Source: Malacoraja senta (taxonomy: Eukaryota). From it: a DNA stretch of 64,000 nt. The stretch's first letter is position 1. Each line of letters starts with the position of its first letter. The translations under genes and the position numbers were made by a program. Positions 12,001 to 57,790 of the stretch are shown piece by piece. The stretch covers positions 118,296,001-118,360,000 of the forward strand of contig CM075977.1 of NCBI GenBank assembly GCA_038087875.1, read 5' to 3'. Below the pieces are notes generated by a model. The model had not been told where the DNA came from and did not search any database. It saw only the letters and a list, made by a program, of their open reading frames with translations.

Positions 12001-15000
12001 CAGGAGAACATGGATAACCTTGCAGAACATGGAGAACATTATTTTTGTCTCGTTAAATGTAGTTGTTTGTGGGTTTTTTTATACTGTTTTTAACTGTGTA
12101 TATGTGGGGGGGGGGGGGGAGGGGGAAACTTTAAAAAATCTCTTCCCTGTACGGGAGACCTGACCTTTTTCCTGTTGGGTCTCCGTTGTCGTTGGGGCCT
12201 AGCTCCGTGGAGCGGCCTCCGACCGGGACGACCTGGGGGCTCCAGTCGCGGAGCCTGTGGAGCTGCGGACTTACCATCGTGGGGCTGGCCGTCCTCGGAG
12301 CGTGAGGAGCGGTGGTGGCTCGCTGCTGCGGCCCGACTCCGGAGCTCCAGCTGCAGACCAGTGGACTGGGACATCGGGAGCTCGCGGGTCCGGGTGAGAG
12401 ACCGCTTTCCGGAGCTCCCGCAACGCAACCTCTCCCGCCCGTGTCGCGGGGTTGGAACGACCCGGAGCGGGGCCGTAAATCGCCCGGCGCGGCTTTAATG
12501 GCCGCGGGACATTCCAGCGCCCGCCGGGGGCTCCAACTTTGTGACTTTTGGGCCCGGAGCGAGGCCATACACCGCCCGGCGCGGCCTCAATGGCCGTGGG
12601 ATTTAACATTGCCCGCCTGGGGCTTCAACATCGGGAGAAAAATGGTGCAGGGGAGAGAAAAGACTTTGCCTTCCATCACAGTGAGGAGGAGATTCACTGT
12701 GATGGATGTTTTTCTGTAAATTGAATTGTTTGTGTGTCGTGTAGGAATTGTTTTGTTTGTATGGCTGTGGAAACGGAGTTTCGTTTGAGCCTCTTTGAGG
12801 TTCAAATGACAAGAAATAAAATCTAATCTAATCTAAGTGTTGAAGAAGGAACTGCAGATGCTGGAAAATCGAAGGTAGACAAAAGTGTTGGAGAAACTCA
12901 GCGGGTGCAGCAGCATCTATGGAGCGAAGGAAGTAGGCAATGATGGATGTAATGTTTTGGGTTGGGAAGCTTATTTGGAGTGATTGTGGGGAAATATAAC
13001 CTGCGTTATTCCAGCACATTGTCTTTTTCTAAAGTGTCATCTGCAGTTCCTTGTGTCTTCACAACTAATTCAGTGAAGGGTCTTCAATCTGAAATGAGAG
13101 CTTTGCTTCTCTTTCCATAGATGCTGCCTGACATGCTGAGTGTTTCCAGAATTTAGTTTTTTCTTATTTTCTTATTTTGATCCTTTTCTAACTTGCTAAT
13201 ACACTACAGGCAGAGGCTATGGATCTTTCAGTATGAAAGTAAAACCACACACAGCCAATGGACAATAGACAAGAGACATTAGGTGCAGGAGTAGGCCCTT
13301 CGAGCCAGCACCACCATTCACTGTGATCATGGCCCAATCAGTACCCCGTTCCTGCCTTATCCCCACATCCCTTGAATCCGCTATCTTTAAGAGCTCTATC
13401 TCTCTCTCTTGAAAGCATCCAGAGAATTGGCCTCCACTGTCTTCTGAGGCAGAGAATTCCACAGATTCACAACTCTCTGGGTGAAATATTTTATCCTCAT
13501 CTCCGTTCTAAAACTTATTCTTAAACTGTGGCCCCTGGTTCTGGACTCCCCCAACATCGGGAACATGTTTCCTGCCTCTAGCGTGTCCAATCCCTTCATA
13601 ATCTTATATGTTTCAATAAGATCTCCTCTCATCCTTCTAAATTCCTGTGTATACAAGCCCAGTTGCTCCATTCTTTCAACATATGACAGTCCCACCATCC
13701 CGGGAATTAATCTCGTGAACCTACGCTGCAATTCCTCAATAGCAAGAATGTCCTTCATCAAATTTGGAGACCAAAACTGCACACAATACTCCAGGTGTGG
13801 TCTCCCTAGGACCGTACAACTGCAGAAGGACCTCTTTGCTCCTATACCATCTCCTCTTGTTATGAAGGCCAACATGCCATTTGCTTTCTTCACTGCTTGC
13901 TGTACCTGCATGCTTACTTTTAGTGACTGATGAACAAGGACACCCAGATCTCGTTGAACTCCCCCTTTTCCTAACTTGACACCATTCGGATAATAATCTG
14001 CCTTCCTGTTCTTGCCACCAAAGTGGATAACCTCACATTTATCCACATTAAACTGCATCTGCCATACGTCTGCCCACTCACCCAACCTGTCCAAGTCACC
14101 CTGCATTCTCATAGCATCCTCCTCACAGTTCACACTGCCACCCAGCTTTGTGTCATCTGCAAATTTGCTAATGTTACTTTTAATCCCTTCACCTAAATCA
14201 TTAATGTATATTGTAAATAGCTGCGGTCCCAGCACCGAGCCTTGCGGTACCCCCACTTGCGCTACCCTCCAATCCACAGGAACTGATCCTGAATCTATAG
14301 ATCATTGTGAAATGATCACCTATGCGTCCACGATTTCTAGAGCCACTTCCTTATGTACCCTGGAATTAGGCCCTGGGGATTTATCAACCTTCATTCCCAT
14401 CAATCCCATGGGATTTATCAACCTTCAGTCCATCAGTCTACCCAACACCATTTCCTGCCTAATGTGAATTTCCTTCAGTTCCTCCGTCACCCGAGGTCCT
14501 CTGGCCACTAGTACATCCGGGAGATTGTTTGTGTCTTACTTAGTGAAGACAGATCCAAAGTACCTGTTCAACTCGTCTGCAATTTCCTTGTTCCCCATAA
14601 TAGATTCACCTGTTTCTGTCTTCAAGCGTCCAACTTTGGTCTTATATACCCTTTGGTCTCACATTCTCCTTTATATTCTTGGCTAGCTTACCTTTGCACC
14701 TCATCTTTTCTCCCCCTATTGCCTTTTTAGTTATTTTTCTGTTGCTCTTTAAAAGTTTCCCAATCCTCTAGCATCCTGGTCATCTTTGCTATGTTATACT
14801 TTTTTATTTTTATACTGTCCTTGTTTTCCCTTGTCAGCCATGGTCACCTCTTATTCCCCTTAGAATCTTTCTTCCTCTTTGGAATGAACTGATCCTGCAC
14901 CTTCTGTATTATTCCCAGAAATACCTGCCATTGTTGTTCCACTGTCATCCCTGCTAGGGTATCTTTCCAGTCAACTTTGGCCAGTTCCTCCCTCATGGCT

Positions 15001-24000: not shown

Positions 24001-27000
24001 GTCGCACGTACCTATCCATCCCCTGAGTTCACCCGCCTTAACGGTCAGGCCTCTTGCATTCAATGCAACAGTCCTTCACGCTCTCTGCTGCGCTCCTGCC
24101 TATTCTATCCACTGAACTTTCTTTCATCACCTTCCATACTGATGACCAGCCTCTCATCTGCCATAGTCCTGCTTTGATTCTGGAAATTTAAAATTGAGGA
24201 ATTAAATGTGTGAAAGAAAGATTAGCAATGGCAACCAGAAAATGACTGGATTGTAATTCAATCACATATGATTCACTAATGTCCTTTGGGGAAAGTTGCT
24301 CTTTACCAATCTGCCCCATATGTTACTCCAGATACTCTATTGTGGTTGACTATTATTAACTGCTTGTTCCTCTCGGGAGCAATTCATAATAGGTAACAAA
24401 TGCTGGCATTACCAGTAATATCCATACCCCATAAATGAATAAATTAAAAAAATATATTATGTGGTTTGATATAATGCATGATCCTAGCAACACATTGAAC
24501 TTTCTATATATATTTCCACTACAAAGTTTATTTAATTGCTAATATTTCAGTCGGTTTATCTTGCATTGTCTTGAAAGTATTGATGACCCCACTATGTCCT
24601 GTGAAGAGAGAGTTGAAACCACATGACTAATGTTAGAAGTACAGCCCTATATCATATATTTTTTAAATTTGGTCTGCTTTAGTGACAGCATATTGGCACA
24701 AAACACTGAAGCTCACTAAGTTGCATAGCAGGGCAACAAAATCCATCTCAAAGGTCAAGATTCTGCACTTGACATATTGTCAATTACATTGGTCCTATGA
24801 TGGGCATGGACATTTTTTTACAGGGCAAGAACACTTGCCTCAAACCAGAAACATACAGTGCCCTCCATAATGTTTGGGACAAAGACCCATCATTTATTTA
24901 TTTGCCTCTGTACTCCACAATATGAGATTTGTAATAGAAAGAAATCACATGTAGTTAAAGTGCACATTGTCAGATTTTAATTAAGGCCATTTTTATACAT
25001 TTTGGTTTCACCATGTAGAAATTACAGCAGTGTTTATACATAGTCCCCCCCCCATTTCAGGGCACCATAATGTTTGGGACACAGCAATGTCATGTAAACG
25101 AAAGTAGTCGTGTTTAGTATTTTGTAGCATATCCTTTGCATGCAATGACAGCTTGAAGTCTACGATTCATGGACATCACCAGTTGCTGGGTGTCTTCTCT
25201 GGTGATGCTCTGCCAGGCCTGTATTGCAGCCATCTTTAGCTTATGCTTGTTTTGGGTCCCCTTCAGTTTTCTCTTCAGCATATAAAAGACATGCTCAATT
25301 GTGTTCAGATCGGGTGATTGCATCTTGCAGTGTAGCCTCTGTATTTCTGTTCGTGAAGTCTTCTGCAGATAGTGGTCATTGACAAATCCACCCCTGACTC
25401 CTGAAGAGTGTTTCTGATCTGTCGGACAGGTGTTTGGGGATTTTTCTTTAGTATAGAAAGAATTCTTCTGTCATCAGCTGTGGAGGTCTTCCTTGGCCTG
25501 CCAGTCCCTTTGCGATTAGTAAGTTCACCAGATGTCTATTTCTTCTTAATGATTTTCCTAACAGTTGATTTTGGTAAGCCTAAAGTTTGGCTGGTGTCTC
25601 TAACAGTTACTCTTGTTTCTCAGTCTCATAATGACTTATTTGACTTTCATTGGCACAACACTGGTCCTCATTTTGATAAACAACAATAAAAGTTACCAAA
25701 GGTGCTGGAAAGACTGGAGGAAAGACAGTGCTGGGAGCTCTCTTATACCTGCATTAAGGTGGCATTTAAACACACCTGAGCAATTACAAACACCTGTGAA
25801 GTCATGGGTCCCAAGCATTATGGTGCCCTGAAAGGGAGGGAGGGAGGGAGGGGGGGGGGGGGGGGACTATGTATAAACACAGCTGTAATTACTACATGGT
25901 GAAACCAAAATGTATAAAAGTTCCCTTTAATAAAATCTGACAATGTGCACTTTAATCACATGTGATTTTTTTTCTATTACAATATCTAAAATTGTGGAGT
26001 ACAGAGGCAACTAAATAAATGATGGGTCTTTGTCCCAAACATTATGGAGGGCATTGTAGACACATAGAAAATAGGTGCAGGAGTAGACCATTCAGCCCTT
26101 TGAGCCAGCACTGCCATTCAATGTGATCATGGCTGATCCAACTAAATCAGTACCCCGTTCCTGCTTTCTCCCCATATCCCTCGATTCCTTTAGTCTTTAA
26201 GAGCTATATCTATATCATAGAAAGAAAAAAACAGTCAGTCAGCAAATGATTGATACTGCATCATTAACATGTATTCAAAGGAGAGATTGCTGACATTCTT
26301 TCTGCAAGAGCAGAGGAGTTTATATTGGAAGAAGGGTTTTAAGTGAATGATCAGAAACTGGCAAAGAAATGGTTTGCGCAGCACTCTTTTGAGCTGCGCA
26401 AAGTGTATAATCTCATTTGAAGTTTGATTGATACATCCTTGATATCACTTTCTGCCAACTCATTTGTACCCAACTCATTTATACTTTAATCAGTTTCCCT
26501 TCCTTTTACTGAACCTAACAAAGAAGTTGGTACAACCTTAATTAGGCCCAGAGTCTCTATAGTGATCCTTTGAAGAATGGGGTCAACAAGCAGTTTCATT
26601 CATGGGGTCATAGTGCAGAAGTTAACCTTAGTCAATATTTATGCAGTAATACGGTGCAGTGAAAATTCTGTATTGTTAATATTTTCATGGTTATGTGCAG
26701 AATAATTAACGGTTGTTGGGCATGGTCTAGATAAATCAGTGATTCAGTAACTGGAGAGAAATGAATGTGCACTTTATTTTCCATTAGATATCATTGATCT
26801 TAAAGAGCCAAATGTGACCTGGGTGAAATTTAACATGAATATGACTGGTTACTATATCGTTAATTATGACAAGAGCAGCACAGAGGAATTAAATGAATTG
26901 TTACAAAATAATCACTTGGCTCTAAGTGATCAGGATCGAGCTGGCCTTATCAACAATGCTTTTGTGCTTGCAAGGTAATTGCTCCTTTTGACTCTTCAAT

Positions 27001-30000
27001 TTGAATTTGGTATTTATTTTCAACACATAACAAATTTGTATTTTGGTATTGTTGTTAACTGTTAATCAGCACCAGTGTGTATGGTTTCACTCAGTTCATT
27101 AAGTAACTAATTATTTGCAAACACTAAGTACAGCTTCTTCCTTGCTGTTATCAGATTACTGAACAATCCTCTCTTTAACTTGGGGTATAGTTCTGATCTT
27201 TCAACCTACCTCATTGTGGACCTTGCACTTTTTATTTGCACTTTCTCTGTAACACAAACACTACAACCTTAAATTCCGCACTCTGGCACTTTTTTCTCTA
27301 CAGTACTTATTGTACTTGTGCATGGCTTGATCGTATTTGTGTATAGTATTATTTGACTGGATCTGTTCTTCTTGCGTATGGTGATTTGACTGGATAAAAC
27401 GCAAACAAAGCTTTTCATGGTATCATGGTACATGTGACAATGATAAACCAAAGGTAGACATAAAATGCTGGAGTAACTCAGCGGGACAGGCAGTATCTCT
27501 GGAGAGAAGGAATAGGTGAGGTTTTGGGTCGAGACCCTTCTTCAGATAAACAAATACTGATTAATGCAATTAAAAGTATAACTTAATCAGTTTTTTAAAA
27601 TAATCAAATCTGTCAAATTGTCTTGCTCATTGGTTGTATTGTAATTGATAGTCATGTTACTCATGTGGTTGTACATTACTTATTGGATTGACCTACCTAT
27701 CCTCAAAAAGATAGTTTATTCTCACTGCAGCAAACATAACAGTAATCTTGCAGCTGGGATCTGAAATGGCATAGTTTGTTCAATATTCATGACACTACAG
27801 CTACCACAATCTTGATACAAGAATTGGAGCAGGATAAGGGCTCCTCAAACTTCCTCTGTAATACATGGTTAATCTTCTACTTAACACCATTTCCCTGCCA
27901 TTCCTCATATCCATCTGTTTCAAATGCAATTAATAACTGAGCTTATGCAATCCTCTGGGGTAGATAATGTGAAATATTCACTACTCCAAGTAAAGACATT
28001 TCCGTTCACTTCAGTCATAAATATCCAACTTCCTACTCTGACCATCATTTAATAACTTACAAAGGACACAAAAGACATTTATTATCACATACACCAATTG
28101 GTGTAGTGAAATTTGACTTGCCATGCAGCACACAAATAAATAAAGATAAGACTCAACATTAAAGAATTTAACAATAAACATAAAAACATTCCCGCACAAT
28201 GGTTCCCACTGTGAGGGAAGGCACAAAGTCCAGTCCCCATCCCCTTGTCCACCCATAATCGGGCCTATTGACCCGATGTTTCAGGCCCTCTCGCCGGGTG
28301 ATGGTGCTCCGGCGTCGGGAGAACCCTCTCAGCGGCTTGGGACACCTGGAACGGCCGCTTCCTTACTGGAGACCGTGGCTTCCGAAGCCAACAGGCCGCG
28401 CTGGATGGAGCTCCACCACTGGTGATCTCGGCGAGAGATCCCAGGCTCCCGATGTTAAAGTCAGCGCCGCCGCCCGTGGCTGGCCGCTCCACAGTCCTGC
28501 AGCTCCGCGATGTTCACCTGTGCTCTCAGCATTCTGGAGTTCCAGCGCGGCGACCCGGGCAAGGCATCGCCCGCTCCGCTCCGCGATAGCGCTCCAGCGC
28601 TGCGCCGCTGCCGAAGCCGTGGCACCCCTCAGGAAATGCTGCTCCAGACCCGTTGGTAGGCCGCGAGGACGGGTCGAAGATGCTGCTAAGAGAAAAGCCG
28701 CCTCTCCGACCGGGTAGGGACCAGGAAGAGCAGTTTCCCCCTTCCTCCCCCCCCCCCTTTTATTAAAAAAGAATAGACCTCCAAACAAAACCCTTTTTAA
28801 CACACTAAAAATAAAAGAAAGAAGTGAAAAGACAGACAGCTGCAGGCTGGGCAGCCATACCCAACTGGATGGCGCCCCCTAACTTGTAACTTTCCTTCAC
28901 AGTTCTAAGGAAGTATCTCAGACAAAAACTCCAATTGTCCCTCTTTCCATGAATTCGATTGAACCAACTGAGTTTTTGCAACATTTTCTGTTATTAGTTA
29001 TAGTTATTAAAAAAACTGATTGTGTTTGTTTCCAGAGGAATTGAATTAAAAATCAAAGAGGTTATGTTAAACCTATACATATCCTTAATTTCACCACACG
29101 TGGATTGCATGTTTCCTGTGTCATGGCTCACTAGGTAGCTTTAAAATATCCATATTAGGCTTGGGATTAAGGTCTTGGAGCACTTTTTTTTTAAAGGAGG
29201 AATGTTCTCCACAGTATTAGACTAATACCTATCTTCCAATTAACATTAGCACATGGTGATGTGGTTGCACTCACATTGCTGTTTGTTGGAATGTTGGGGT
29301 CTGCACATCAACAGCCATGTTGATGCACAACTGCATTGCAGCTGTTACACTTCAGAAATTAGTTAAATGGTTGTAACTTTGGAATATTCTAAAATCGTTA
29401 TAAAATATGCTGTACATATGCAATAATTATAATGCAAGTAATTTCTGGGAGCAACCCCATCCCCCCCCCCCCCCTTTATTTCCCAAATTATATCCATCTG
29501 TCTTGGAATTCTATGTAAATCTTTCAATCAGTCTTCTGTGCCTGCCACAGTACTAAAACCACAATACACTGATACAATATCAGATCCTGACAAAAATATT
29601 GTGAATATTGTACTTATTTTAAGAAGAGCTCCAAGAATAAGTCAGGAATAGGTCAGTGATCCTAACATCAGTGGTGGTAAAGTTACTGGAGAGCATTCTG
29701 AGAGATGGGATCTATCTGCAATTGGAAAAACAAGGACTGATTAGGGATAGTCAGCATAGATTTGTGCATGGGAAAACATGTCTCACAAATTACATTGAAT
29801 TTCTTGAAGAGGTGATGAAGAGAATTGACGAGGGAAGAACCATAGATGTCTTGGTTGAGGAGGATTTAGAGATCTGGGACCAGTGAGTGATGTGCAGCAG
29901 AAATTGGTGCTGAATTCACTTCGATAAAAATATAGAAAATAGTCACAGGAGTCGGCCCTTCGAGCCAGCACCACCATTCAATATAATCATGGCTGATGGT

Positions 30001-33000
30001 CCAAAATCAGTACCCTGCTCCTGCTTTCTCCCCATATCCCTTGATTCCGTTAGCCTTATGACCTATATCTAACTGATGACCTGACTGTTGCCTTTCTTCC
30101 TGCATAAGGGCAGTGACAGAAGAGTGCAGCTCCAGTGGTAAGGATTGCACAGAGTGGGACAGGAAAGCAGACAAATTATTCTTTAATTTGCTCAGTGTCG
30201 GTAGACTTGGTGATGTTCAAGGACTTAATTACGGACCAGAATGAAAACACCATGTTTGTTATTGACCATAAATAAACGTGTGAAGAGATGTGTTTTAATC
30301 ACCTCCCACCTCCCTCTGCCCCAAGATCATCTGAAGGTTCCTTAATTATAAGCCTTGGATGAACCAGAAGGTCCACAATCTGTTGCTGCCCAGATCTTGC
30401 GTATTAAAGTTCCACAATACAGGGTCCTACAAGAAGTCCAGATTCAAGGTTGACAATGCCATGATTTTTTCCAAGTGTAGGTGGATGGCAGGAGTTTAGT
30501 TTACTATTGTCACATGTACTGAGGTGCAATGAAAAACTTTTTGTTGCATGCTATCCAGTCAATGAAAAGACTACACATGATTATAATCAAACCTCCAACA
30601 GTGCACATACAGGATAAAGGGTATAGTTCAAGATAAAGTCCATTAAAAATAGTTCAAAGGTCTTCAATGAGGTAGTTGGGAGGTCAGAACAGTACTCTAG
30701 CTGGTGAGATTGAAGACTTTAATTTGTTAGTATTTTACAGAAATACATTACACAAATTCGGTTTGGTTTATTATTGTCATGTGTACTGAGGAACAGTGAA
30801 AAGCTTATTTGTTGCTTGCTATCCGGTCAGCAAAAGGACTATACATGATTACAACCAAGTTATCCACAGATTACAGATACAGGATAAAGGGTATAATGTT
30901 TAATGCAAGATTAAGTCCGATTAAAGATAATTTGAAGGTCTCCAGTGAGGTAGATGGTAGGTCAGGACTGCTCTCTTGCTGTTGAGATTGAAGACTTCAA
31001 TTTATTATTAGTATTTTACAGTAGCTCTTGCCTGATGGGGAGGGGAGAAGAGGAAGTGACCAGGGAGAGACTTGTCCTTGATTTTGCTGATGGCCTTGCC
31101 AAGGCAGCGTGAAGTGTAGATGGAGTCTTTGGAAGGGAGGTTGGTTTGCTTAATGGCATGTGAGTGAGAGTAAAGAGCAGGGAAATAGTTGTGGGAATGA
31201 TGAAGGTGGTCCGAGAGCTGGTATAGATTCAAAAGGACAAATATCATAAGGAAAATTGTGAAATTTGATAAATGTGCCACTATGCAATTTAAAAATATTA
31301 ATGTATTGTGTAGACTAATGTGTTTTATTTTATTATCCTTTAGTGCAGGGAAAATCTCAATAAAGGAGGTGCTGTACTTGATCAGCTATTTAAAGAATGA
31401 AACCAGCACTGCACCAATAGTCGAAACGTTGCTACAGCTCAATGATATCTACATGCTTGTTGAGAAGAGGGGGGATCTGTCCGTTTCCAATCTGATGAAG
31501 GTGCCTGATATTTTTAACTTAATTATCTTTTTAACTTGTCATGTATCTGGATACCATTATTCAATCTGTTTGTTGAATTAAATATGCTACTGTTGAATTA
31601 AATATTCTACTTAACACAAAGCTCCAGCAAACATAGTGGATATTTGCCCAAAACTCTTGTTAATGCTGCACTTTTGAGAGGAATTGCTTCATGTTGGTTG
31701 TACTTCAAAAATTCAATAATGTAATATATCAACATTTCCGCATTCAATGTGTGCATGATGACATATTTCATAGCACAATGGTCATTCAGAGCATTGCTAG
31801 AAGATGGATCAATCTGGTTTGAAGCATGCCTACTGGATTTTATCAGCATTGAATGTTCTGCAAGTATGAGTTTTAAAAGGCATCTGCTTGGGCATATACA
31901 CAACTGGCAATGGGAATCCAATTTGGAGGCGGTCCCCTTTAAGTTATTTACATATTGGCTTCCTTGGGGCATGACCCCCACCGTGGGAGCAATCCCACCA
32001 AACTCTACCCAAGCTTTGCTTAACATAGAAACATAGGTACAGGAGTAGGCCATTCGGCCCTTCGAGCCTGCACCGCCATTCAATATGATTATGGCTGATC
32101 ATCCAACTCGGTATCCTGTACCTGCCTTCTCTCCATACCCCCTGATCCCTTTGGCTACAAGGGCCACATCTAACTCCCTCTTAAATGTAGCCAATGAACT
32201 GGCCTCAACTACTTTCTGTGGCAGAGAATTCCACCAACGGGTCCTTTGGCCACCTTTTCCACGCCAACCAAGTTTGCATTTTGGGTAAGTCCCATTTGAC
32301 CCATAGCTGTCCAAATCCTTCCTACCCATGCATATGTCCAAATGTCTTTTACAGGTTATAATTTTATTCACTTCTACGGCTTTCTCTCGCAACTCATTCG
32401 AGATACAGAAAAAGTTGCCCCAAGGTTCCTCTCAATAACTACTCAATAACCAAAAATCTGTAGCCTCCTTTTGCTCTGATATTTTATTTAATTCTCATGT
32501 TTAATCGATAATGTTTTATTATTAATGTTTTATGTGTCATTCCTAACTGTCACTGTATGTCATGTCACTTGCGGGCGGAGCACCAAGGCCAATTCCTTGT
32601 ATGTGAATACTTGGCCAATAAACTTATTCATTCATTCGTGAATCTCTCTCCTCTCACCTTAATGGGCCTGTCCCACTTAGGCAACATTTTAGGCGACTGC
32701 AGGAGACACATGGTCGCCACATGTTCGTGGGTAGTTGCCGGGGAGTCGCCTTCATGGTCGTGAGGATTTCCCGCATTCTGGGAACTAGTCGCGGCCTCAT
32801 TACATGTTGAAAAATTAGCGACGACTAGAATGAAGCCGCAATGGAGAGTAGCGAGAATTCACGAGCCGTAGGTGGGTTGACAGGAGGTCCTAATGGGTTG
32901 CCAGGAGGTCGAAGGTTCTCGTAGGTTGTAGCCGGTGCCGACCGGTGAATTTCATTGGCTCGTTGGGGGGAAAAAAGGTAAGCAGTAGTTTTCAGAACCA

Positions 33001-36000
33001 AGGATAACCGACCGGTAATGTTAATGTCCGCCGAGCTTCACAGCCGTGCTTCTCTGGCTTCTTAAAAGTTGTCTCCACTCCTTCTCCCTCCCCCCCCCCC
33101 TCTCCCCCCCTCCCCCCCCTCTTTTAAAGGACTTACCGTACACTGTGCTTTAGCTGTCTTAATTACAGTGCCAACCTTCCTGTTCATCGTGGTGTGTGTC
33201 TATATCACCTTGGCTTTGCACCATGTGAATTTTTTAGACAGAGCAAGCGGGGGGAGCGCTGTCTAAAAAATTCACACAGGGTGGTGAAGGAAGTGATGTG
33301 TTTGTGTGTGTGTTCCACTCTGACAGTCGCTGTTCCAGTTGCCGGTTTTTCAGGCGACTGCTGAAAAATCGCCTAAGTGGGACAGGCCCATAAGCCTATG
33401 CTCTCAAGTTTTAGAATACTCTAGCCTACGAAAGAGACTGAGTATTCTCTTGATCCATATCCATCATGATCTTGTACATTTAAATAAATTGTCCCCCCGG
33501 TTGCAATCTTCCCCCTATAACTCAAGCCCTTAAGCTTAGGCAACATCCTGATGAATCTCTTCCACTCCATTTCCCACATATTGGCATCCTTCCTGTCGCT
33601 GGGCGACCAGAACACCACATAGTACTTCAAGTGTGATCTCATCAATGACTTGTACATCTGCATTACGATGTGCTAATTGTAGTGTTGCAGCTTTTGCATT
33701 ATGTTCAGCAACAGATTAGAAATGATTCTGAAATTGTCATTTATATGGTGGATTCCCTTTTATGCACTGAATCCAAACTTTGTGTTTGTGTTACAGAAAT
33801 ATATTTTTAACGTTTTCGGAGACTTGATTGACCAACAAACCTGGAGTAATAATGGATCAGACTCTGAGAGATATCTGCGTGCCAAACTTCTTGCTACAGC
33901 ATGCAATTTGAATAATGCTAAATGTGTGCAGAAAGCAAATATTATGTTTACCAAGTGGATGAATACTACAGATTTAAGTGTGTAAGTAGATGAGTGAGCT
34001 CAAGGCCTATTGGATCTAATTTGTATCTCCAGTAATTCCTTTTGATTATACTTGGAGAATATTTTTAATACAAAAAAAAGAATTAAATATTATATTCCAT
34101 ATGTTTGTTTTAAGATGATTCTACTGATTATTAAAAACAAAACCTCTGAGATAATCTAAATTTATTTGTTTTATTATTAGTGTGCATAGGATTTTGGTAT
34201 TGCAAGAATGACCAACATATATTGCCTTTTGCTAATTGTCATTGAGAATGTGGTGATAAGTTCCTGTCTTGAACAGTTGCAGCCTTGACAGTGAAAATAT
34301 TTGGATAGTATAATTCACACTCTAATATCTTTGTTTAGGTAACAGCCTGATCTCATTATTTTGATGCTTTCATTGACATTTTTTGTGGAATAAATAGAAA
34401 GTGTATTCTATAAGTGTATAATTAGTGCAAAATATTTGTGCCTCATTTCTTTCTAAAATATCTCTATTTCACTTGCCTTTCCAGTACAGGTACAGTACAT
34501 GTTCTTTCTCCGAAGTCCTTTCTAAAGCATCTGTCTCAGTTTAGCTTTTTTATTGCAGGTTACCGTCTGATCTAACTGTGACAATCCTCACTGTTGGAGC
34601 ACGCACCGTTGAGGGCTGGACATTCATAAGCCAGATGTACAATCAATTGCAATCAGAGTCGGACAAAAACAAAATGCTTACAGCCATGGCAAAAACCAAC
34701 AATGTTCAGCATCTAATCTGGTTTGTGGAACATTAACTTTCATGCTGCCTAATAGTTTATTGAAATAAGACTGTGTTCATAATCAAAGTGGTAATGGTGC
34801 ATTAATTTCCATTTTTCTATTCTGTTTCTTTAGAAATGCTCACCATCTATGTTTCAACTCTTACAAAAGATTTGTACCTGTTAAATTACTGTATCTTATC
34901 GCCAAATGCATGATGGATTATATTATTCCTAATTACGTTATTACATAACCCAACAAAGTAGATCCAGAGGAGAAACTTTACATGAATTGTTTTAATGGTT
35001 TTAACAGCCTATGTATCTCTGGACCAATCCTCACAAATTTTAAGAATTGATTATTTTGTATTTCTTTGCAGATATTGAACGGATTATCTTTGCTTGATTT
35101 CTTAGGTTGATGTACAACGGCTTGAATCATAACAAAATAAGGACACAGGAACTGCCCTTTATTCTTGCTACTTCCAGCAAGAGCCGAATTGGATATCTAT
35201 TTGCTTGGGATTTTGTTAAAGAAAATTGGGATGATCTGATTAAAAAGTAGGTTCTTAACGCTGATATTCTATTTTGTTACAGGTTAATATATATATTTTG
35301 GCCCATAATAAAATTGACAGCAAATCTAATTCATGACACAGTCAGGTGAACCATTTGTGAAAATATTTCTATTACTTTTGCTTATATTTTAGCACTGAAA
35401 TTTTATAAATTAGTTTATATATTCTGTATTCTAATTAATTAAAAATATAATTACATTTCTGTGTACAATGTGTTGCCATTTTAATATTCTAGCTTGTGCA
35501 ACTTTCCCTTTATGCCATGGCATTGTTTTTAATCCTCCGTTATTAATTCCTTACTTAATTGTGAAGTTTGTTCAACATGGTTACTGAATTAATTCTAAAG
35601 AGACATGCATATTCCTACCACCACTGTTAATGCGTTCAATTCGAAGGCTGGTGGGTTGAAAGATAAGTAATAGGGGAAGTCTGTCCATGAAATAGTGAGA
35701 ACGGACATGAGAAATGCAGGTGAGAGCTCCATTCACTGCAGCAGAGAGGAATGAACGGTTTCAGGAAGGAGGGGGGACATTTCAGAGGCACTGCCTTATC
35801 AATGCGACAAATGTGATGAAACAAACTGGGGAAATGGGAGGTAGGATGAAAGGATGTATTAGCTTAGATGACAATGGGAGTCTGTGGTCTTGTAAAAGAT
35901 GTAAGATACCAGTGTAGCAGAGAATTTATTTATCGTTCAAGAGATTACTCCCTCTAGCCGCTAAGTGGACTGCATGGTTAAGGGGGATGTCTTTATACAC

Positions 36001-39000
36001 ATGCGAGCTCACTGTCAGAGACCTTCAGAGCTTCTTCACAGACAAATCTTCCAAAACAGTCTTTTGATTGATAAATTCTTTATTGTTGATGAAAAACAAT
36101 AAGGTACATCCAAACTTCTTCTGACTCGTACACTATAATCTTCATCGAACTCAAGCTTATCACTTTAAATGTTAGAAAACTCCTCGTGTCTCCATTACAC
36201 TTCGCATGGTCAAAGGGTAAACCTTCCCCATGCTGGTCCGAAACTAAACTAAAAACTAAGCTTCTGTGCCAGAAACTTAACTCCAAACACGCCCTAAAAT
36301 ACATCATAAATCCCACCCACAATATAACGGGCAGTCTAAAATTTAAAGACACATGTCATCATCAATGACATGCAAAACAGGCCAAATGGCCACTACATAC
36401 TGGCCCCTAATTATTCCGAGTATATAACGAGGCAATTATTAATAAACATTAAAAAAGTAGCCATGAAGGCTTAACATATATCAAAAGCAAAAAGCCGGGA
36501 AATTGAACCTCGGTCTCCACGTGACAGGCGGGGATACTAACCACTATACTAACGAGGAATAAAATAGCATGCACTATATATCCGCAATCAGAATTCTTCA
36601 TCGACTCTTCCATCTTCACTTTCGCCTTCTAGAAGCAAGCAGAACTTGTTTATTAATCTTATTAAAACACTGGTTTTAGTTTTAAGTCGTACCGTGTGCA
36701 CCAAACCCTTAAAATCAGGCATGATACCCAATATATAGTCCAAAACATAACAGTCCAAAGCTTTGATAGCATGAAAAGTCTTCCTCCATGTCCGCTCAAC
36801 TCATGGATGTGTTGTAACAGCAATGTTGAAGTGTGAAAATCCTTCACAAGAATAACAGGATTTTTAGCAATAAAGTTCACCATTAGGTTTGATTGAATTT
36901 CCGGATCATTAACAGCGATTTCAAATCCCAGCTCAAGCTTTGGCCATTCTCTGTCTGGCTGACAGAGATTTTAGTTCATAGAAACATAGAAAATAGGTGC
37001 AGGAGTAGGCCATTCGGCCCTTCGAGCCTGCACCGCCATTCAATATGATCATGGCTGATCATCCAACTCAGTATCCCGTACCTGCCTTCTCTCCATATCC
37101 CCTGATCCCCTTAGCCACAAGGGCCACATCTAACTCCTTCTTAAATATAGCCAATGAACTGGCCTCAACTACCTTCTGTGGCAGAGAATTCCAGAGATTC
37201 ACCACTCTCTGTGTGAAAAATGTTTTTCTCATCTCGGTCCTAAAAGACTCCCCCCCCCCCCCCCCCCCCCCCCGCTATCCTTAAACTGTGACCCCTAGTT
37301 CTGGACCTCCCCAACATCGGGAACAATCTTCCTGCATCTAGCCTGTCCAACCCCTTAAGAATTTTGTAAGTTTCTATAAGATCCCCCCTCAATCTTCTAA
37401 ATTCTAGCGAGTACAAGCCGAGAAACGGTTCGCTGTCAGTTCTCTGGAAACTTCATCCGCAGGATTTTCTTTTGTGTTAACATATTTCAGTTGTACAACA
37501 TTAGTAACTCCCAATGCTCTTTCCACTGGCAGATTGTCTCTGTCCAAATCCAACTCTGGTTTCTTTGGCTCTATCATCTAGTGGAATGCTTTCACAATAG
37601 TCGCTGATCCACTTGGAGAGTGTGAATCCTCCCTTATTGCAAAGAGAAGTCAGATGTTCTACTGGTAGAATTGCTTCCTGCTCAGTAGACATGGATCTTA
37701 AGCAATCATCCTTGTAGAAATTATTCTTCAAAGAGATTCTTACTTCATGAAATTTAGTATTCTCGCCAAACTTACGTTTCAAATTCTGGTTGCTCTGCTC
37801 AGCCTTATGACGATTATTAGGCAGACTAACACTTTCTTGTTTGAAAGGTAAGTCCACACAATAGTGTCCGTCAATCTTTACTGAGTAGTTCATAATATCC
37901 ATGAACTTCAACTCTTCATTCGACATCTCTTCAGATTCCTTGCTGGTACTTTCATTCAAGTCATGATGATATTGCTTCATCACTGGCTTTTCAAATTTAT
38001 CAATAGATATTTGATTATAAGCAATGGCAGGATAGTTCCTCTGATTCCTGTTTTCATTATTCCTTTTCAAGGAGCCATAGATAACCCATCCAAGTCGGGT
38101 TTTTGTAGCATATGGTCCATCACCTTGGCTTCTCACAATCTGTATAGGTTCTAATGCCTTTAAAACATTCGTTCCGATAAGTAGATCAACACTAGAATTC
38201 ATTTCAGATAGCTTGACATCCTTCAGGTAAGGCCATTGTTTCAAGTCTTCATATCTGGGTATATTTTGATGACCAACAGGCATGGTTCCATGTGTAAACA
38301 CTTCAGATATTGGTATAAAATTATCTTTATCCAAACTGGATATCTCCATACTCATAATGTAATGACCTGCTCTCTATCTTTAGTCATGGTACGTAATCGA
38401 ATTTTATTCTCTTCTGTGATGTTCAGCCTTCTCATTAGGTTTTCTGTGCAAAAGGTAGTCGAACTTCCGTGATCCAAAAAGGCATATGTTCGCAACACTG
38501 TATTCGTCTTACTATTCCTTACCTGTACTGGTTAGATAGAAAAAATACAAGCTTCAACACCCGGCCCCAATATGAGCAGTTACTTGAGGCGAGGTGATAG
38601 CATCTCTAGTAGTCGGCTTCTTCTTCTGTTCCGTTTGCTCCGGTTCATCTTCTTCTATTTGCTCTGATAGCTCTTCATCTATTTGTTCCAGTTCTTCCTC
38701 TTCCAAATGCTCTGGTATCTCTTCTTCAATGTGAAGTGCTTCAGGATGATATTGCCTGCACTTATAACAAATTATAGGACTCTTACAGTCTCTCACCATA
38801 TGTCCTTTTTTTCAAACATCCAAAACAGATTCCCTTCTCTTTCAAGAAATCCATCTTGTCTTCATATTCTTTCATCTTGAATCTTCGACACCATCTTATG
38901 GTGTGACCAACTTCATCACATAACAAACAGAATACTATTTGCTTGCTAGTAGATACATTTCCTTTCATTCTATCTGTCATTTCCACAGGTCTGGTTGTGA

Positions 39001-53272: not shown

Positions 53273-54348
53273 TTACTTCGTCATCCATGTCCTTCCTCAA
53301 TGGAACATGCCAGTCCTGAACTTTGATCAACTGGCCGACTCCCACATGTTAGATGTAAACTTGCCCAATAATAAGGGCTCCCAGTGTACCATCCCAAATT
53401 TCTGCCTACTATCATTGTAATTTGTCATTCCAATTTAGTATCTTAACGAAAGTTCCAACCTTCTCCCTGTTCAAAACAATCTTAAACTCATGGCATTGTG
53501 ATCATTATCCCTAAAATGTTTTTCTACTGTAACACCAGTCACCTGGCCAGGTTCATTTCCCAACATAATGCCTTGCCGCAAGGCTCGGTGTTGGTACCCC
53601 TGTTATTTACAATATATATTAACGATTTAGACAAGGGGATTAAATGTGACTTTCAAGAGAGAGCTAGATAGGGCTCTTAAAAATAGTGGAGTCAGGGGAT
53701 ATGGGGAGAAGGCAGGAACGGGGTACTGATTGGGGATGTTCAGCTATGATCACATTGAATGGCGGTGCTGGCTCGAAGCACCGAATAGCCTACTCCTGCA
53801 CCTATTGTCTATTGTCTTGTGACATCTCCAAGTTTGTAGGTGACACAAAGCTGGGTGGCAATGTGAGCTGCGATGAGGCTGCAGGGTGACTTGGATAGGT
53901 TGGATGAGTAGGCAGATGCATGGCAGATGCAGTATAATGTTGATAAATGTGAGGTTATCCACTTTGGTGGCAAGAACAGGAAGGCAGATTATTATCTGTA
54001 TAGTGTCAGATTAGGAAAAGGGGAGGTGCAACGAGACCTGGGTGTGCTTGTACATCAATCACTGAAAGTAAGCATGCAGGTACAGCAAGCAGTGAAGAAA
54101 GCTAATGGCCTTCATTGCGAGAGGATTTGAGTTTAGGAGCAAGGAGGTCCTACTGTAGTTGAACAGGGCCCTGATGAGACCGAACCAGGAGTATTGTGTA
54201 CAATTTTGGTCTCCTAATTTGAGGAAGGACATTATTGCTATTGAAGGAGTGCAGCAGAGGTTCACCAGGTTTATTCCCATGATGGCGGGACTGACATATG
54301 ATGAAAGAATGGGTCGACTGGGCTTGTATTCACTGGAATTTAGAAGGA

Positions 54349-55049: not shown

Positions 55050-57790
55050 ATAGAGAGAAAGGAAAAGGAGGTGGGGTAGCGTTGCTGGTTAGAGAGGAGA
55101 TTAACGCAGTGGAAAGGAAGGACATTAGCTTGGAGGATGTGGAATCGGTATGGGTAGAGCTGCGAAACACTAAGGGGCAGAAAACGCTGGTGGGTGTTGT
55201 GTACAGGCCACCTAGCAGTAGTAGTGAAGTTGGGGATGGCATCAAACACGAAATTAGAAATGCGTGCAACAAAGACAAAACAGTTATAATGGGTGACTTC
55301 AATCTACATATAGATTGGGTGAATCAAATTGGCAGGGGTGCTGAGGAAGAGGATTTCTTGGAATGTATGAGGGATAGTTATCTAAACCAACATGTAGAGG
55401 AACCAACGAGAGAGCAGGCTATTCTAGACTGGGTATTGAGTAATGAGGAAGGGTTAGTTAGCAGACTTGTGCGTGCCCCCTTGGGCAAGAGTGACAATAA
55501 TATGGTTGAGTTCTTCATTAGGATGGAGAGTGACATTGTTAATTCAGAAACAATGGTTCTGAACTTAAAGAAAGGTAACTTTGAGGGTATGAGACGTGAA
55601 TTGGCCAAGATTGACAGGCAATTAGTTCTAAAAGGGTTGACGGTGGATATGCAATGGAAGGCATTTAAAGACTGCATGGATGAACTACAAAAATTGTTCA
55701 TCCCAGTTTGGCAAAAGAATAAATCAGGGAAGGTAGTGCATCCGTGGATAACAAGGGAAATCAGGGATAGTATCAAAGCAAAAGATGATGCGTACAAATT
55801 AGCCAGAAAAAGCAGCATACCAGAGGACTGGGAGAAATTCAGAGACCGGCGGCAGAGGAGGACAAAGGGCTTAATTAGGAAAGGGAAAATAGATTATGAA
55901 AGGAAACTGGCAGGGAACATAAAAACTGACTGCAAAAGTTTTTATAGATATGTGAAGAGAAAGAGATTAGTTAAAACAAATGTAGGTCCCTTGCAGTCAG
56001 AAACAGGTGAATTGATCATGGGGAACAAGGATATGGCGGACCAATTGAATAACTACTTTGGTTCCGTCTTCACTAAGGAAGACATAAATAATCTGCCAGA
56101 AATAGCAGGGGGCCGCGGGTCAAAGGAGATGGAGGAACTGAGTAAAATCCAGGTTAGTCGGGAAGTGGTGTTGGGTAAATTGAATGGATTAAAGGCCGAT
56201 AAATCACCAGGGCCAGATAGGCTGCATCCCAGAGTCCTTAAGGAAGTAGCTCCAGAAATAGTGGATGCATTAGTGATAATTTTTCAAAACTCTTTAGATT
56301 CTGGAGTAGTTCCTGAGGATTGGAGGGTAGCAAACGTAACCCCACTTTTTAAGAAGGGAGGGAGAGAGAGAAAACGGGGAATTACAGACCAGTTAGTCTA
56401 ACATCGGTAGTGGGGAAACTGCTAGAGTCAGTTATTAAAGATGGGATAGCAGCACATTTGGAAAGTGGTGAAATCATTGGACAAAGTCAGCATGGATTTA
56501 CGAAAGGTAAATCGTGTCTGACGAATCTTATAGAATTTTTTGAGGATGTAACTAGTAGAGTGGATAGGGGAGAACCAGTGGATGTGTTGTATCTGGACTT
56601 TCAGAAGGCTTTCGACAAGGTACCACATAAGAGATTAGGATACAAACTTAAATCACACGGTATTGGGGGTTCAGTATTGATGTGGATAGAGAACTGGCTG
56701 GCAAACAGGAAGCAAAGAGTAGGAGTAAACGGGTCCTTTTCACAATGGCAGGCAGTGACTAGTGGGGTACCGCAAGGCTCAGTGCTGGGACCCCAGCTAT
56801 TTACAATTTATATTAATGATCTGGACGAGGGAATTGAAAGCAACATCTCCAAGTTTGCGGATGACACTAAGCTGGGGGGCAGTGTTAGCTGTGAGGAGGA
56901 TGCTAGGAGACTGCAAGGTGACTTGGATAGGCTGGGTGAGTGGGCAAATGTTTGGCAGATGCAGTATAATGTGGATAAATGTGAGGTTATCCACTTTGGT
57001 GGCAAAAACGGGAAGGCAGACTATTATCTAAATGGTGGCCGATTAGGAAATGGGGAGATGCAGCGAGACCTGGGTGTCATGGTACACCAGTCATTGAAAG
57101 TAGGCATGCAGGTGCAGCAGGCAGTGAAGAAAGTGAATGGTATGTTGGCCTTCATAGCAAGAGGATTTGAGTATAGGAGTAGGGAGGTTCTACTGCAGTT
57201 GTACATGGTCTTGGTGAGACCACACCTGGAGTATTGCGTACAGATTTGATCTCCAAATCTGAGGAAGGACATTATAGCCATAGAGGGAGTGCAGAGAAGG
57301 TTCACCAGACTGATTCCTGGGATGTCAGGACTTTCATATGAAGAAAGACTGGATAGACTTGGCTTATACTTGCTAGAATTTAGGAGATTGAGAGGGGATC
57401 TTATAGAAACGTACAAAATTCTTATGGGGTTGGACAGGCTAGATGCAGGAAGATTGTTCCCGATGTTGGGGAAGTCCAGGACAAGGGGTCACAGATTAAG
57501 GATAAGGGGGAAATCCTTTAAGACCGATATGAGGACAAACTTTTTCACACAGAGAGTGGTGAATCTCTGGAACTCTCTGCCACATAGGGTAGTTGAGGCC
57601 AGTTCATTGGCTATATTTACGAGGGAGTTAGATGTGGCCCTTGTGGCTAAAGGGATCAGGGGGTATGGAGAGAAGGCAGGTACGGGATACTGAGTTGGAT
57701 GATCAGCCATGATCATATTGAATGGCGGTGCAGGCTCGAAGGGCCGAATGACCTACTCCTGCACCTAATTTCAATGTATCTATGTATCTA
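55050..57790 (+). mobile_element. Young CR1 LINE, nearly complete ORF2 with a frameshift near 56370 and a TGA at 57247
   Basis: Endonuclease YRPP/MGDFN, RT QHGF...DFQKAFD...[10 protein letters not shown]...FADD, C-terminus; (CTATGTAT)n tail. Confidence 0.95.

What the first reader, a model, noticed from the sequence alone, without database searches (positions are those of the whole stretch)
36489..36590. BEL/Pao retrotransposon carries its own truncated tRNA-Asp cassette with a Pol III terminator in its 3'UTR
Seen: about 30 nt after the pol stop codon (TGA at 36590-36588) and about 90 nt before the PPT, in the element's sense orientation, lies a 65-nt tRNA-Asp(GTC) copy. It starts exactly at tRNA position 1 and keeps the A box and a near-consensus B box. 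The 3' acceptor strand is replaced by GC-TTTTT, and a TATATA lies about 20 nt upstream. There is no poly(A) tail, SINE body or TSD, so it does not look like a secondary retroposition. Known: LTR retrotransposons normally prime reverse transcription with a host tRNA, and T4 or longer terminates Pol III. Inference: the element may encode its own Pol III-transcribed tRNA-like RNA ending ...CCCGGCUUUU, which could serve as a self-supplied primer, a packaging decoy or an insulator.
Basis: partly seen in the sequence, partly recalled or inferred. Interest (0 to 1): 0.78.

Follow-up and report, generated by a model that had tools for sequence, protein, structure and literature searches.

The report
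Decayed tRNA-Asp copy inside retrotransposon
A dead, internally deleted BEL/Pao retrotransposon carries a worn, 3'-shortened copy of a host tRNA-Asp between its pol gene and its 3' LTR; it is most likely a tRNA picked up during reverse transcription and inherited by the family, not a working gene the element uses to prime itself.

Summary
The 65-base tRNA-Asp(GUC)-like stretch is real. It lies at 36558-36494 on the minus strand, in the element's sense, 29 nt after the pol stop and 81 nt before the polypurine tract (PPT).

It is not a working tRNA:
- ARAGORN finds nothing, and the Rfam tRNA model scores 15.5 bits against a cut-off of 29.
- The acceptor 3' strand is missing.
- The stretch folds no better than shuffled sequence.

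The "Pol III terminator" and the TATA are what a 45%-T UTR gives by chance. There is one T run of 4 or more about every 31 nt.

The host element is a dead BEL/Pao copy. Its LTRs are 92% alike, the RT and integrase cores are deleted, and a LINE piece is inserted.

Eleven distant relatives from metagenome contigs were read through this region. They share the pol end, the PPT and a paired 3' module. Nine of ten with a measured UTR have 109-144 nt; the window has 110 + 65. None has a tRNA. So the cassette is a lineage-specific insert in the variable part of the UTR. Two relatives carry a host HSP70-type mRNA piece at the same place.

The scan has noted this feature before on other DNA of this genome: six first-reader notes describe BEL/Pao copies with a complete, CCA-tailed tRNA-Asp at this position. 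I could not check them.

Best reading: a mature tRNA captured by template switching, decayed here. No complementarity supports self-priming.

The parts
41417..41902 (-). 5' LTR (TG..CA); flank CTGAT at 41907-41903
   Evidence: Direct repeat with 35913-36397, 92% identity. Ends read.
41395..41416 (-). Post-LTR zone without a TGG-type primer-binding site (TT then AAGTCGAAGG...)
   Evidence: The same TACA + 1-4 nt + AAGTCARAAA occurs in 7 relatives. No tRNA-Asp-type PBS.
38783..39835 (-). gag remnant ORF (350 aa)
   Evidence: DUF1759 at E 0.0025. 41% identity at E 8.7e-64 to a DUF1759 protein.
37501..38355 (-). Protease region and a stump of RT (284 aa ORF)
   Evidence: Collinear with P0001 residues 412-562, 39% identity, E 6e-32. 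No Pfam RT domain is left.
36975..37422 (-). Later insertion: 3' piece of a CR1-like LINE inside the pol remnant
   Evidence: At least 10 further copies in the window at 68-97% identity. ORF pieces. The CR1-like naming is from my own knowledge of the motif.
36588..36883 (-). Integrase zinc-finger remnant and pol C-terminal end with stop TGA at 36590-36588; the integrase core between them is deleted
   Evidence: Integrase_H2C2 at E 0.035 and DUF5641 at E 0.01, the latter reaching the end of the profile. The C-end aligns with 9 intact relatives.
36494..36558 (-). tRNA-Asp(GUC)-like cassette, 65 nt, lacking the acceptor 3' strand and CCA
   Evidence: Not called by ARAGORN or by Rfam at gathering. 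Fold z 0.03.
36489..36493 (-). T5 run read as a Pol III terminator; one of four T runs of 4 or more in the UTR
36575..36580 (-). TATATA 17-22 nt upstream of the cassette; a second one lies at 36426-36421
36386..36464 (-). Conserved 3' cis module: arm ATGGCTACT (36464-36456), PPT AATTAGGGGCCAG (36412-36400), and a partner arm in the first bases of the LTR (36394-36386)
   Evidence: Shared with metagenome relatives, with co-varying arms.
35913..36397 (-). 3' LTR; flank CTGGT at 35912-35908 (target duplication, 4 of 5 matching)

Best explanation
The cassette is a fossil of a host tRNA-Asp. An ancestor of this BEL/Pao lineage copied it into its own cDNA, and the lineage then inherited it as part of the 3' UTR.

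Inferred mechanism: during minus-strand synthesis the reverse transcriptase had copied U3, the PPT and the conserved 3' module. It then switched onto a co-packaged mature tRNA-Asp, copied it back to position 1, and returned to the genomic RNA just after the pol stop. This leaves a sense-oriented tRNA between pol and PPT, with no poly(A) tail and no target duplication.

In this particular copy the element is long dead and the cassette has decayed with it. It has point changes, one lost base in the anticodon stem, and has lost the acceptor 3' strand and CCA. The T5 after it is ordinary T-rich UTR. This copy makes no useful Pol III RNA and primes nothing.

Shown: the anatomy, the decay, the absence from distant relatives, and the chance level of the Pol III signals.

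Inferred: capture by template switching, family-wide inheritance, and a former CCA end.
For: - The cassette sits in the element's sense, inside the UTR, flanked on both sides by element sequence.
- The element is dead. Its LTRs are 92% alike, the RT and integrase cores are deleted, and a LINE piece is inserted.
- Relatives with intact ORFs of about 2000 aa share the pol end, the PPT and the paired 3' module.
- Their UTR from stop to PPT is 109-144 nt in nine of ten relatives measured. The window has 175 = 110 + 65.
- None of the 30 loci has a tRNA by ARAGORN. None of the 12 longest has any Rfam hit.
- The cassette ends 29 nt upstream of the conserved module, so the cis signals are spared.
- Two relatives, L020 and L022, carry a host HSP70-superfamily mRNA piece joined just upstream of the same module.
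- Template-switch capture by LTR elements, Pao and BEL members included, is documented (PMC5131818).
- Six notes on this genome report BEL/Pao copies with a complete CCA-tailed tRNA-Asp at this place (leads, not tested).
- By my recollection of vertebrate tRNA-Asp the cassette differs at about 9% of positions. That is more than the roughly 4% per LTR since insertion, which fits a capture older than this copy.
Against: - Family-wide presence and the CCA end therefore rest on unchecked first-reader notes.
- Junction microsimilarity, a hallmark of template switching, cannot be assessed without the ancestral UTR.
- A truncated form could be a subfamily state rather than a private deletion.
- RT normally stalls at modified tRNA bases, so a full-length copy is a rare event.
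Confidence: 0.65

Rival explanations
1. The captured tRNA is kept by selection in working family members as a cis element of the genomic RNA. It could be a tRNA-like structure used for priming, packaging, RNase P/Z processing or export. The copy here would be a decayed example of a functional module.
For: - Six notes report a well-preserved, CCA-tailed tRNA-Asp at the same place in other copies.
- The clade lacks a TGG-type PBS and has a conserved non-standard post-LTR site (note s1-179754). An unusual priming route is therefore conceivable.
- The cassette sits next to, but outside, the conserved PPT hairpin module.
Against: - Relatives with the same non-TGG site and intact ORFs have no tRNA. 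The odd PBS therefore does not depend on the cassette.
- The cassette does not pair with the post-LTR zone better than shuffles do.
- There is no tRNA-Asp-type PBS.
- Preservation in other copies may simply reflect youth.
Confidence: 0.15
2. One reading: the truncated cassette is a Pol III unit (A box, B box, T5 terminator, upstream TATA). It would make a roughly 70-nt tRNA-like RNA that serves as self-primer, decoy or insulator.
For: - An A-box-like and a B-box-like stretch remain.
- T5 follows directly, and TATATA lies 17-22 nt upstream.
Against: - T runs of 4 or more occur every ~31 nt in this UTR, and TATATA occurs twice.
- The B box has two departures, and the T stem has non-standard pairs.
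- The RNA folds no better than shuffles and has no acceptor stem.
- Pairing with the PBS zone is not above chance.
- The element is dead.
- Other copies are reported with a full acceptor stem and CCA.
Confidence: 0.07
3. A one-off secondary insertion into this copy after it integrated: a tRNA retropseudogene or the head of a tRNA-derived SINE.
For: - A 7-nt direct repeat GATATAT lies 18 nt upstream and 12 nt downstream of the cassette.
- SINE heads often have a degenerate acceptor 3' strand.
Against: - The repeat is at chance level for this composition. My estimate is about 0.3 such matches expected, using the base frequencies.
- There is no A-rich tail and no SINE body.
- There is no other copy of the cassette or of its flanks in 64 kb.
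- The same tRNA at the same place is noted in six other BEL/Pao copies of this genome.
Confidence: 0.08

Closest known systems
LTR-mediated retrocopies formed by template switching (Tan et al. 2016, PMC5131818; includes Pao BATUMI and BEL18_AG)
   Same: - Host RNA lies inside an LTR element, with element sequence on both sides.
- There is no poly(A) tail and no target duplication of its own.
- It is carried along when the element moves.
- L020 and L022 found here are plain examples in this clade.
   Different: - The captured RNA here is a whole small Pol III RNA, a tRNA, not an mRNA piece.
- It does not replace coding sequence.
- By the scan's other notes it is kept by many copies of a family.
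TRIMp3 elements: Helenus (tRNA-like) and Cassandra/Ajax (5S-like) (Kojima 2024, PMC10886601)
   Same: LTR retrotransposons that carry a small-RNA-derived stretch with Pol III promoter boxes, spread as part of the element.
   Different: - In those elements the small-RNA piece lies in both LTRs of non-coding elements under 1 kb, and is thought to drive transcription of the whole template.
- Here there is a single copy in the internal 3' UTR of a BEL/Pao element, which is far too long for Pol III.
cqgypsy_1 of Culex (Marsano et al. 2012, PMC3286476)
   Same: CCA-tailed copies of mature tRNAs embedded in an LTR element, which the authors explain by reverse transcription of mature tRNA.
   Different: - It is a head-to-head tRNA dimer at the 5' LTR/PBS border, with a 26-bp duplication.
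- It was seen in one Osvaldo-like gypsy element, not at the pol-PPT interval.
Primer-tRNA read-through scars of retroviruses and LTR elements
   Same: tRNA letters are written into the element by its own reverse transcriptase.
   Different: - Read-through gives the complement of the tRNA next to U5/PBS.
- Here the tRNA is in sense orientation and lies upstream of the PPT.
- tRNA-Asp is not this element's PBS partner.
tRNA-derived SINE heads
   Same: A-box and B-box remnants, with a degenerate acceptor 3' strand.
   Different: No body, no LINE-type tail, no convincing target duplication, and no dispersed copies in the window.

Membership tests
BEL/Pao LTR retrotransposon | Two LTRs with TG..CA ends and a 4-6 bp target duplication | tested here: met
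   LTRs of 485 nt at 92% identity, with TG..CA ends. Flanks CTGAT and CTGGT match at 4 of 5.
BEL/Pao LTR retrotransposon | gag of the DUF1759 type | tested here: met
   The window ORF scores E 0.0025, below Pfam's cut-off. It is 41% identical at E 8.7e-64 to proteins that pass the cut-off.
BEL/Pao LTR retrotransposon | pol with protease, RT, RNase H and integrase, ending in DUF5641 | tested here: inconclusive
   Only relics remain. The protease region is collinear with P0001. H2C2 scores E 0.035 and DUF5641 E 0.01. The C-end aligns with intact relatives. The RT and integrase cores are deleted.
BEL/Pao LTR retrotransposon | PBS complementary to the 3' end of a tRNA (TGG...) | tested here: not met
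   The post-LTR sequence is TT-AAGTCGAAGG. The same non-TGG site occurs in 7 relatives.
Working tRNA gene / Pol III unit | Cloverleaf with an acceptor stem, recognised by tRNA finders | tested here: not met
   ARAGORN finds 0. Rfam gives 15.5 bits against 29, covering model positions 8-63 only. Fold z is 0.03.
Working tRNA gene / Pol III unit | Intact A and B boxes and a terminator beyond chance | tested here: inconclusive
   The A-box region is kept. The B box is 9 of 11 by my reading. The T5 is at chance level.
Working tRNA gene / Pol III unit | A transcript of the predicted size | not testable with these tools
No listed run holder is on record as RNA.
tRNA-derived SINE | tRNA head plus body and a LINE-type or A-rich tail, a target duplication, and many dispersed copies | tested here: not met
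   There is no tail or body and no other copy in 64 kb. The only flanking repeat is a chance-level 7-mer.
TRIMp3 (Helenus type) | tRNA-like stretch inside both LTRs of a short non-coding element | tested here: not met
   The cassette is internal and single. The LTRs hold no tRNA-like match.
LTR-mediated retrocopy (template-switch capture) | Host RNA segment flanked on both sides by element sequence, without poly(A) or its own target duplication | tested here: met
   The UTR length equals the relatives' length plus the cassette.
LTR-mediated retrocopy (template-switch capture) | Origin from a processed RNA (encoded CCA) and microsimilarity at the joints | not testable with these tools
   The CCA end is missing in this copy. 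It is reported in other copies only by untested notes. The ancestral UTR is not available.

The most novel reading that the evidence does not exclude
An abundant skate BEL/Pao lineage has no tRNA-type primer-binding site. It keeps a complete, CCA-tailed tRNA-Asp inside its genomic RNA as a working cis element. This could be a built-in tRNA-like tag used for priming or packaging, or a signal cut by RNase P/Z. The copy here would be a decayed example.
Probability: 0.12. Interest if true: 0.8.

Novelty: new variant of a known kind. Interest (0 to 1): 0.4.

Why it matters
If the other notes on this genome hold, a whole BEL/Pao family spreads a tRNA-Asp copy with every insertion.

- This would inflate tRNA-Asp counts in skate genome annotation.
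- It would scatter Pol III/TFIIIC-type boxes through the genome.
- It would be a clean natural case of a retrotransposon capturing a mature tRNA at a defined permissive site.

The comparison made here also defines the cis module that such captures must spare: the PPT, a co-varying stem and the LTR start. It shows too that the clade has a conserved primer site that is not of the TGG type. This single copy, taken alone, is an ordinary decayed relic.

Tried and rejected
There is therefore no read depth, no view of other copies and no RNA evidence.
I handled them only inside local scripts (composition, a local alignment, printing seven bases).

**Searches that found nothing**
- A 24-nt LTR pattern had 0 exact matches in metagenome contigs and in viral contigs.
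- A gag profile scan of viral contigs found no relative.
- Findings look-ups by place and by sequence were blank.
- Paper searches found no description of a tRNA copy in a BEL/Pao 3' UTR. The BEL/Pao survey PMC3118150 does not mention tRNA at all.

**Uninformative result**
- The look-up of sequencing runs listed 20 runs from 9 coded organisms. Fourteen hold 32-40% of the sampled words, six hold 6-23%, and none holds half. Without laying reads this says nothing about the cassette.

**Ideas rejected**
- Self-priming by pairing of the cassette with the post-LTR zone: 138 of 500 shuffles do as well.
- tRNA-Asp as the element's primer: no PBS of that type within 3 mismatches in the window, and none in 30 relatives. 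The pattern was typed from my memory of the tRNA's 3' end.
- The drz-agam-1 ribozyme hit on the opposite strand: 18.8 bits against a cut-off of 37, taken as chance.
- A GATATAT target duplication: at chance level.

Full report
**What is there**

Read on the minus strand, the sequence runs in this order:
- the pol stop TGA at 36590-36588;
- TATATA at 36580-36575;
- a T4 run at 36564-36561;
- a 65-nt tRNA-like stretch at 36558-36494;
- T5 at 36493-36489;
- 76 nt of T-rich spacer (36488-36413) that holds the arm ATGGCTACT at 36464-36456;
- the PPT motif AATTAGGGGCCAG at 36412-36400;
- two bases, then the 3' LTR from 36397.

**The host element**

- Direct repeats at 35913-36397 and 41417-41902 are 92% alike.
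- They begin with TG and end with CA, and are flanked by CTGAT and CTGGT.
- The 5-kb interior is a wreck of a BEL/Pao element.
- A 350-aa gag ORF gives a weak DUF1759 hit. It is 41% identical, at E 8.7e-64, to a fish protein that carries DUF1759.
- A protease-region ORF is collinear with that protein.
- Of pol, only a zinc-finger stump of integrase and the DUF5641 end remain.
- A 448-nt piece of a LINE, present many times in the window, is inserted at 36975-37422.
- The copy is long dead and non-autonomous.

**Is the stretch a tRNA?**

- ARAGORN finds none in the window.
- Rfam finds nothing at gathering.
- A permissive local scan gives the tRNA model 15.5 bits against a cut-off of 29 (E 2.5). 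It covers model positions 8-63, has four non-standard pairs, and shows an anticodon loop that reads GUC.
- From my own knowledge of vertebrate cytoplasmic tRNA-Asp(GUC), the stretch matches it from position 1 at about 58 of 64 positions. I count five substitutions, one base lost in the anticodon stem, and then a break after about position 66. That is far beyond chance, but no tool tested it here.
- As RNA the stretch folds at -14.4 kcal/mol, the same as shuffles (z 0.03), and forms no cloverleaf.

**Pol III signals**

- Outside the cassette the UTR is 45% T.
- It holds four runs of T4 or more in 125 nt, about one every 31 nt. The rate over the whole element is 0.68 per 100 nt.
- It holds two TATATA.
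- A T run next to the cassette and a TATA about 20 nt upstream are therefore expected by chance.
- By my reading the B box departs from the consensus at two of eleven places.

**Self-priming**

- The sequence after the 5' LTR (TT-AAGTCGAAGG...) has no TGG-type PBS.
- It pairs with the cassette no better than with shuffled cassettes: 138 of 500 shuffles do as well.
- A PBS of the tRNA-Asp type is absent from the window at up to 3 mismatches, and absent from all relatives. The pattern came from my memory of the tRNA's 3' end.

**Relatives**

A gag profile retrieved 30 metagenome contigs of unknown hosts, with gag 32-43% identical. At least eight hold intact gag-pol ORFs of about 2000 aa.

- *Pol end.* Their pol ends align with the window's last ORF. 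The shared pattern is ..KGLV..V.LKTKT..L.RP..KLCLL.E, followed by 2-9 residues and a stop. The TGA at 36590-36588 is therefore close to the native stop.
- *3' module.* Eleven of them, read through this region, share the 3' module with the window: the PPT AATTAGGGGCCGG and an LTR start TRTGT.GGAGCCA.
- *Paired arms.* A 7-12 bp arm 50-60 nt upstream of the PPT pairs with bases about +4 to +14 of the LTR. The arms co-vary: TTGGCTCC with GGAGCCAA, TGGCTCTT with AAGAGCCA, ATGGCTC with GAGCCAT. The window has ATGGCTACT with AGTGGCCAT.
- *UTR length.* The distance from stop to PPT is 109-144 nt in nine of the ten relatives measured. The window has 175, that is 110 plus the 65-nt cassette.
- *No tRNA.* None of the 30 loci has a tRNA by ARAGORN. 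None of the 12 longest has any Rfam hit.

The cassette is therefore a lineage-specific insert in the variable part of the UTR. It ends 29 nt upstream of the conserved module.

**A parallel capture**

In relatives L020 and L022, pol is replaced in frame by a C-terminal piece of an HSP70-superfamily protein. The best match is to PDB chain 1ud0_A at E 8.6e-08, and Pfam HSP70 is weak. The piece is joined within about 40 nt upstream of the same arm-PPT module. This is the known LTR-mediated retrocopy structure (PMC5131818). It shows that in this clade the interval between pol and the 3' module accepts captured host RNA.

**Same genome, other windows**

The scan's index holds six first-reader notes on other DNA of this genome: s1-177979, s1-141264, s1-175046, s1-140997, s1-140910 and s1-141684. 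Each describes a BEL/Pao copy with a tRNA-Asp between pol and the 3' LTR, and five of the six say it has an encoded CCA. A follow-up, s1-179754, found that an abundant skate BEL/Pao lacks a tRNA-type PBS. The six are unchecked notes and I could not read their sequences. Even so, the same tRNA at the same place in the same superfamily and genome makes an independent origin for this copy very unlikely.

**Mechanism**

A sense-oriented tRNA that starts at position 1 and lies upstream of the PPT is what minus-strand synthesis would leave. The reverse transcriptase would switch from the genomic RNA to the 3' end of a packaged mature tRNA, copy it to its 5' end, and switch back.

Primer read-through would instead give the complement of the tRNA next to U5. 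A gene-level capture would not encode CCA.

By my recollection-based count the cassette differs from tRNA-Asp at about 9% of positions. Each LTR has changed by about 4% since insertion. This fits a capture older than this insertion.

The missing acceptor 3' strand is best read as a small deletion in a decaying copy. The T5 is best read as native UTR. The relative L004 has a similar T-rich run at the aligned place, which is a weak hint only.

**What could not be done**

- The open DNA collections hold no close relative.
- So copy-by-copy presence, the CCA state and expression remain untested here.
- No paper in the library describes a tRNA copy in a BEL/Pao UTR.
- The nearest published cases are Helenus and Cassandra, with small-RNA pieces in the LTRs of TRIMs (PMC10886601), and cqgypsy_1, with CCA-tailed tRNAs at the PBS (PMC3286476).

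**Verdict**

- The functional reading (own Pol III gene, self-primer) is not supported.
- The best explanation is a captured mature tRNA-Asp, inherited by the family and decayed in this dead copy (confidence 0.65).
- The family-level feature is a new variant of a known kind of event. It deserves one survey of the genome's copies.

Noticed in passing
window 36386-36464 (-); L003, L004, L006, L007, L010, L016, L021, L023, L027 around their PPT: A 7-12 bp pairing links a UTR site 50-60 nt upstream of the PPT with bases about +4 to +14 of the LTR. The two arms change together across relatives, while the PPT AATTAGGGGCCGG is invariant. This may be a hairpin that presents the PPT.
   Followed up: partly
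window 41395-41425 (-); L002:72-120, L006:2161-2210, L007:447-500, L008:1048-1100, L011:29-80, L016:3724-3780, L021:128-180: The whole clade lacks a TGG-type primer-binding site. The LTR ends ..TACA and, after 1-4 nt, comes a conserved AAGTCARAAA (window: AAGTCGAAGG). The primer is unknown; an internal or anticodon-loop tRNA site is possible.
   Followed up: partly
L020:4186-4632 and L022:3730-4800: In two related elements, pol is replaced in frame by a C-terminal piece of an HSP70-superfamily protein, joined just upstream of the PPT module. This is a host mRNA capture of the LTR-mediated retrocopy type.
   Followed up: partly
window 36975-37422 (-), also 407-835, 13265-13662, 26057-26193, 29924-30074, 32022-32233, 53692-53812, 57358-57784: The 3' end piece of an abundant LINE (ORF tail ..[11 protein letters not shown].., CRl-like from my own knowledge) is inserted in the pol remnant and scattered through the window.
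   Followed up: no
window 36493-36561 (+): A sub-threshold Rfam match to the drz-agam-1 ribozyme (18.8 bits against a cut-off of 37, E 0.31) lies on the strand opposite the tRNA-like stretch. I took it as chance.
   Followed up: no
L002, L004, L006, L009, L010, L011, L016, L017: Metagenome contigs (MDSP/MDSQ and ERZ5069xx/ERZ5070xx records) hold apparently intact BEL/Pao elements with single gag-pol ORFs of about 2000 aa. These are presumably DNA of an animal host in those samples.
   Followed up: no
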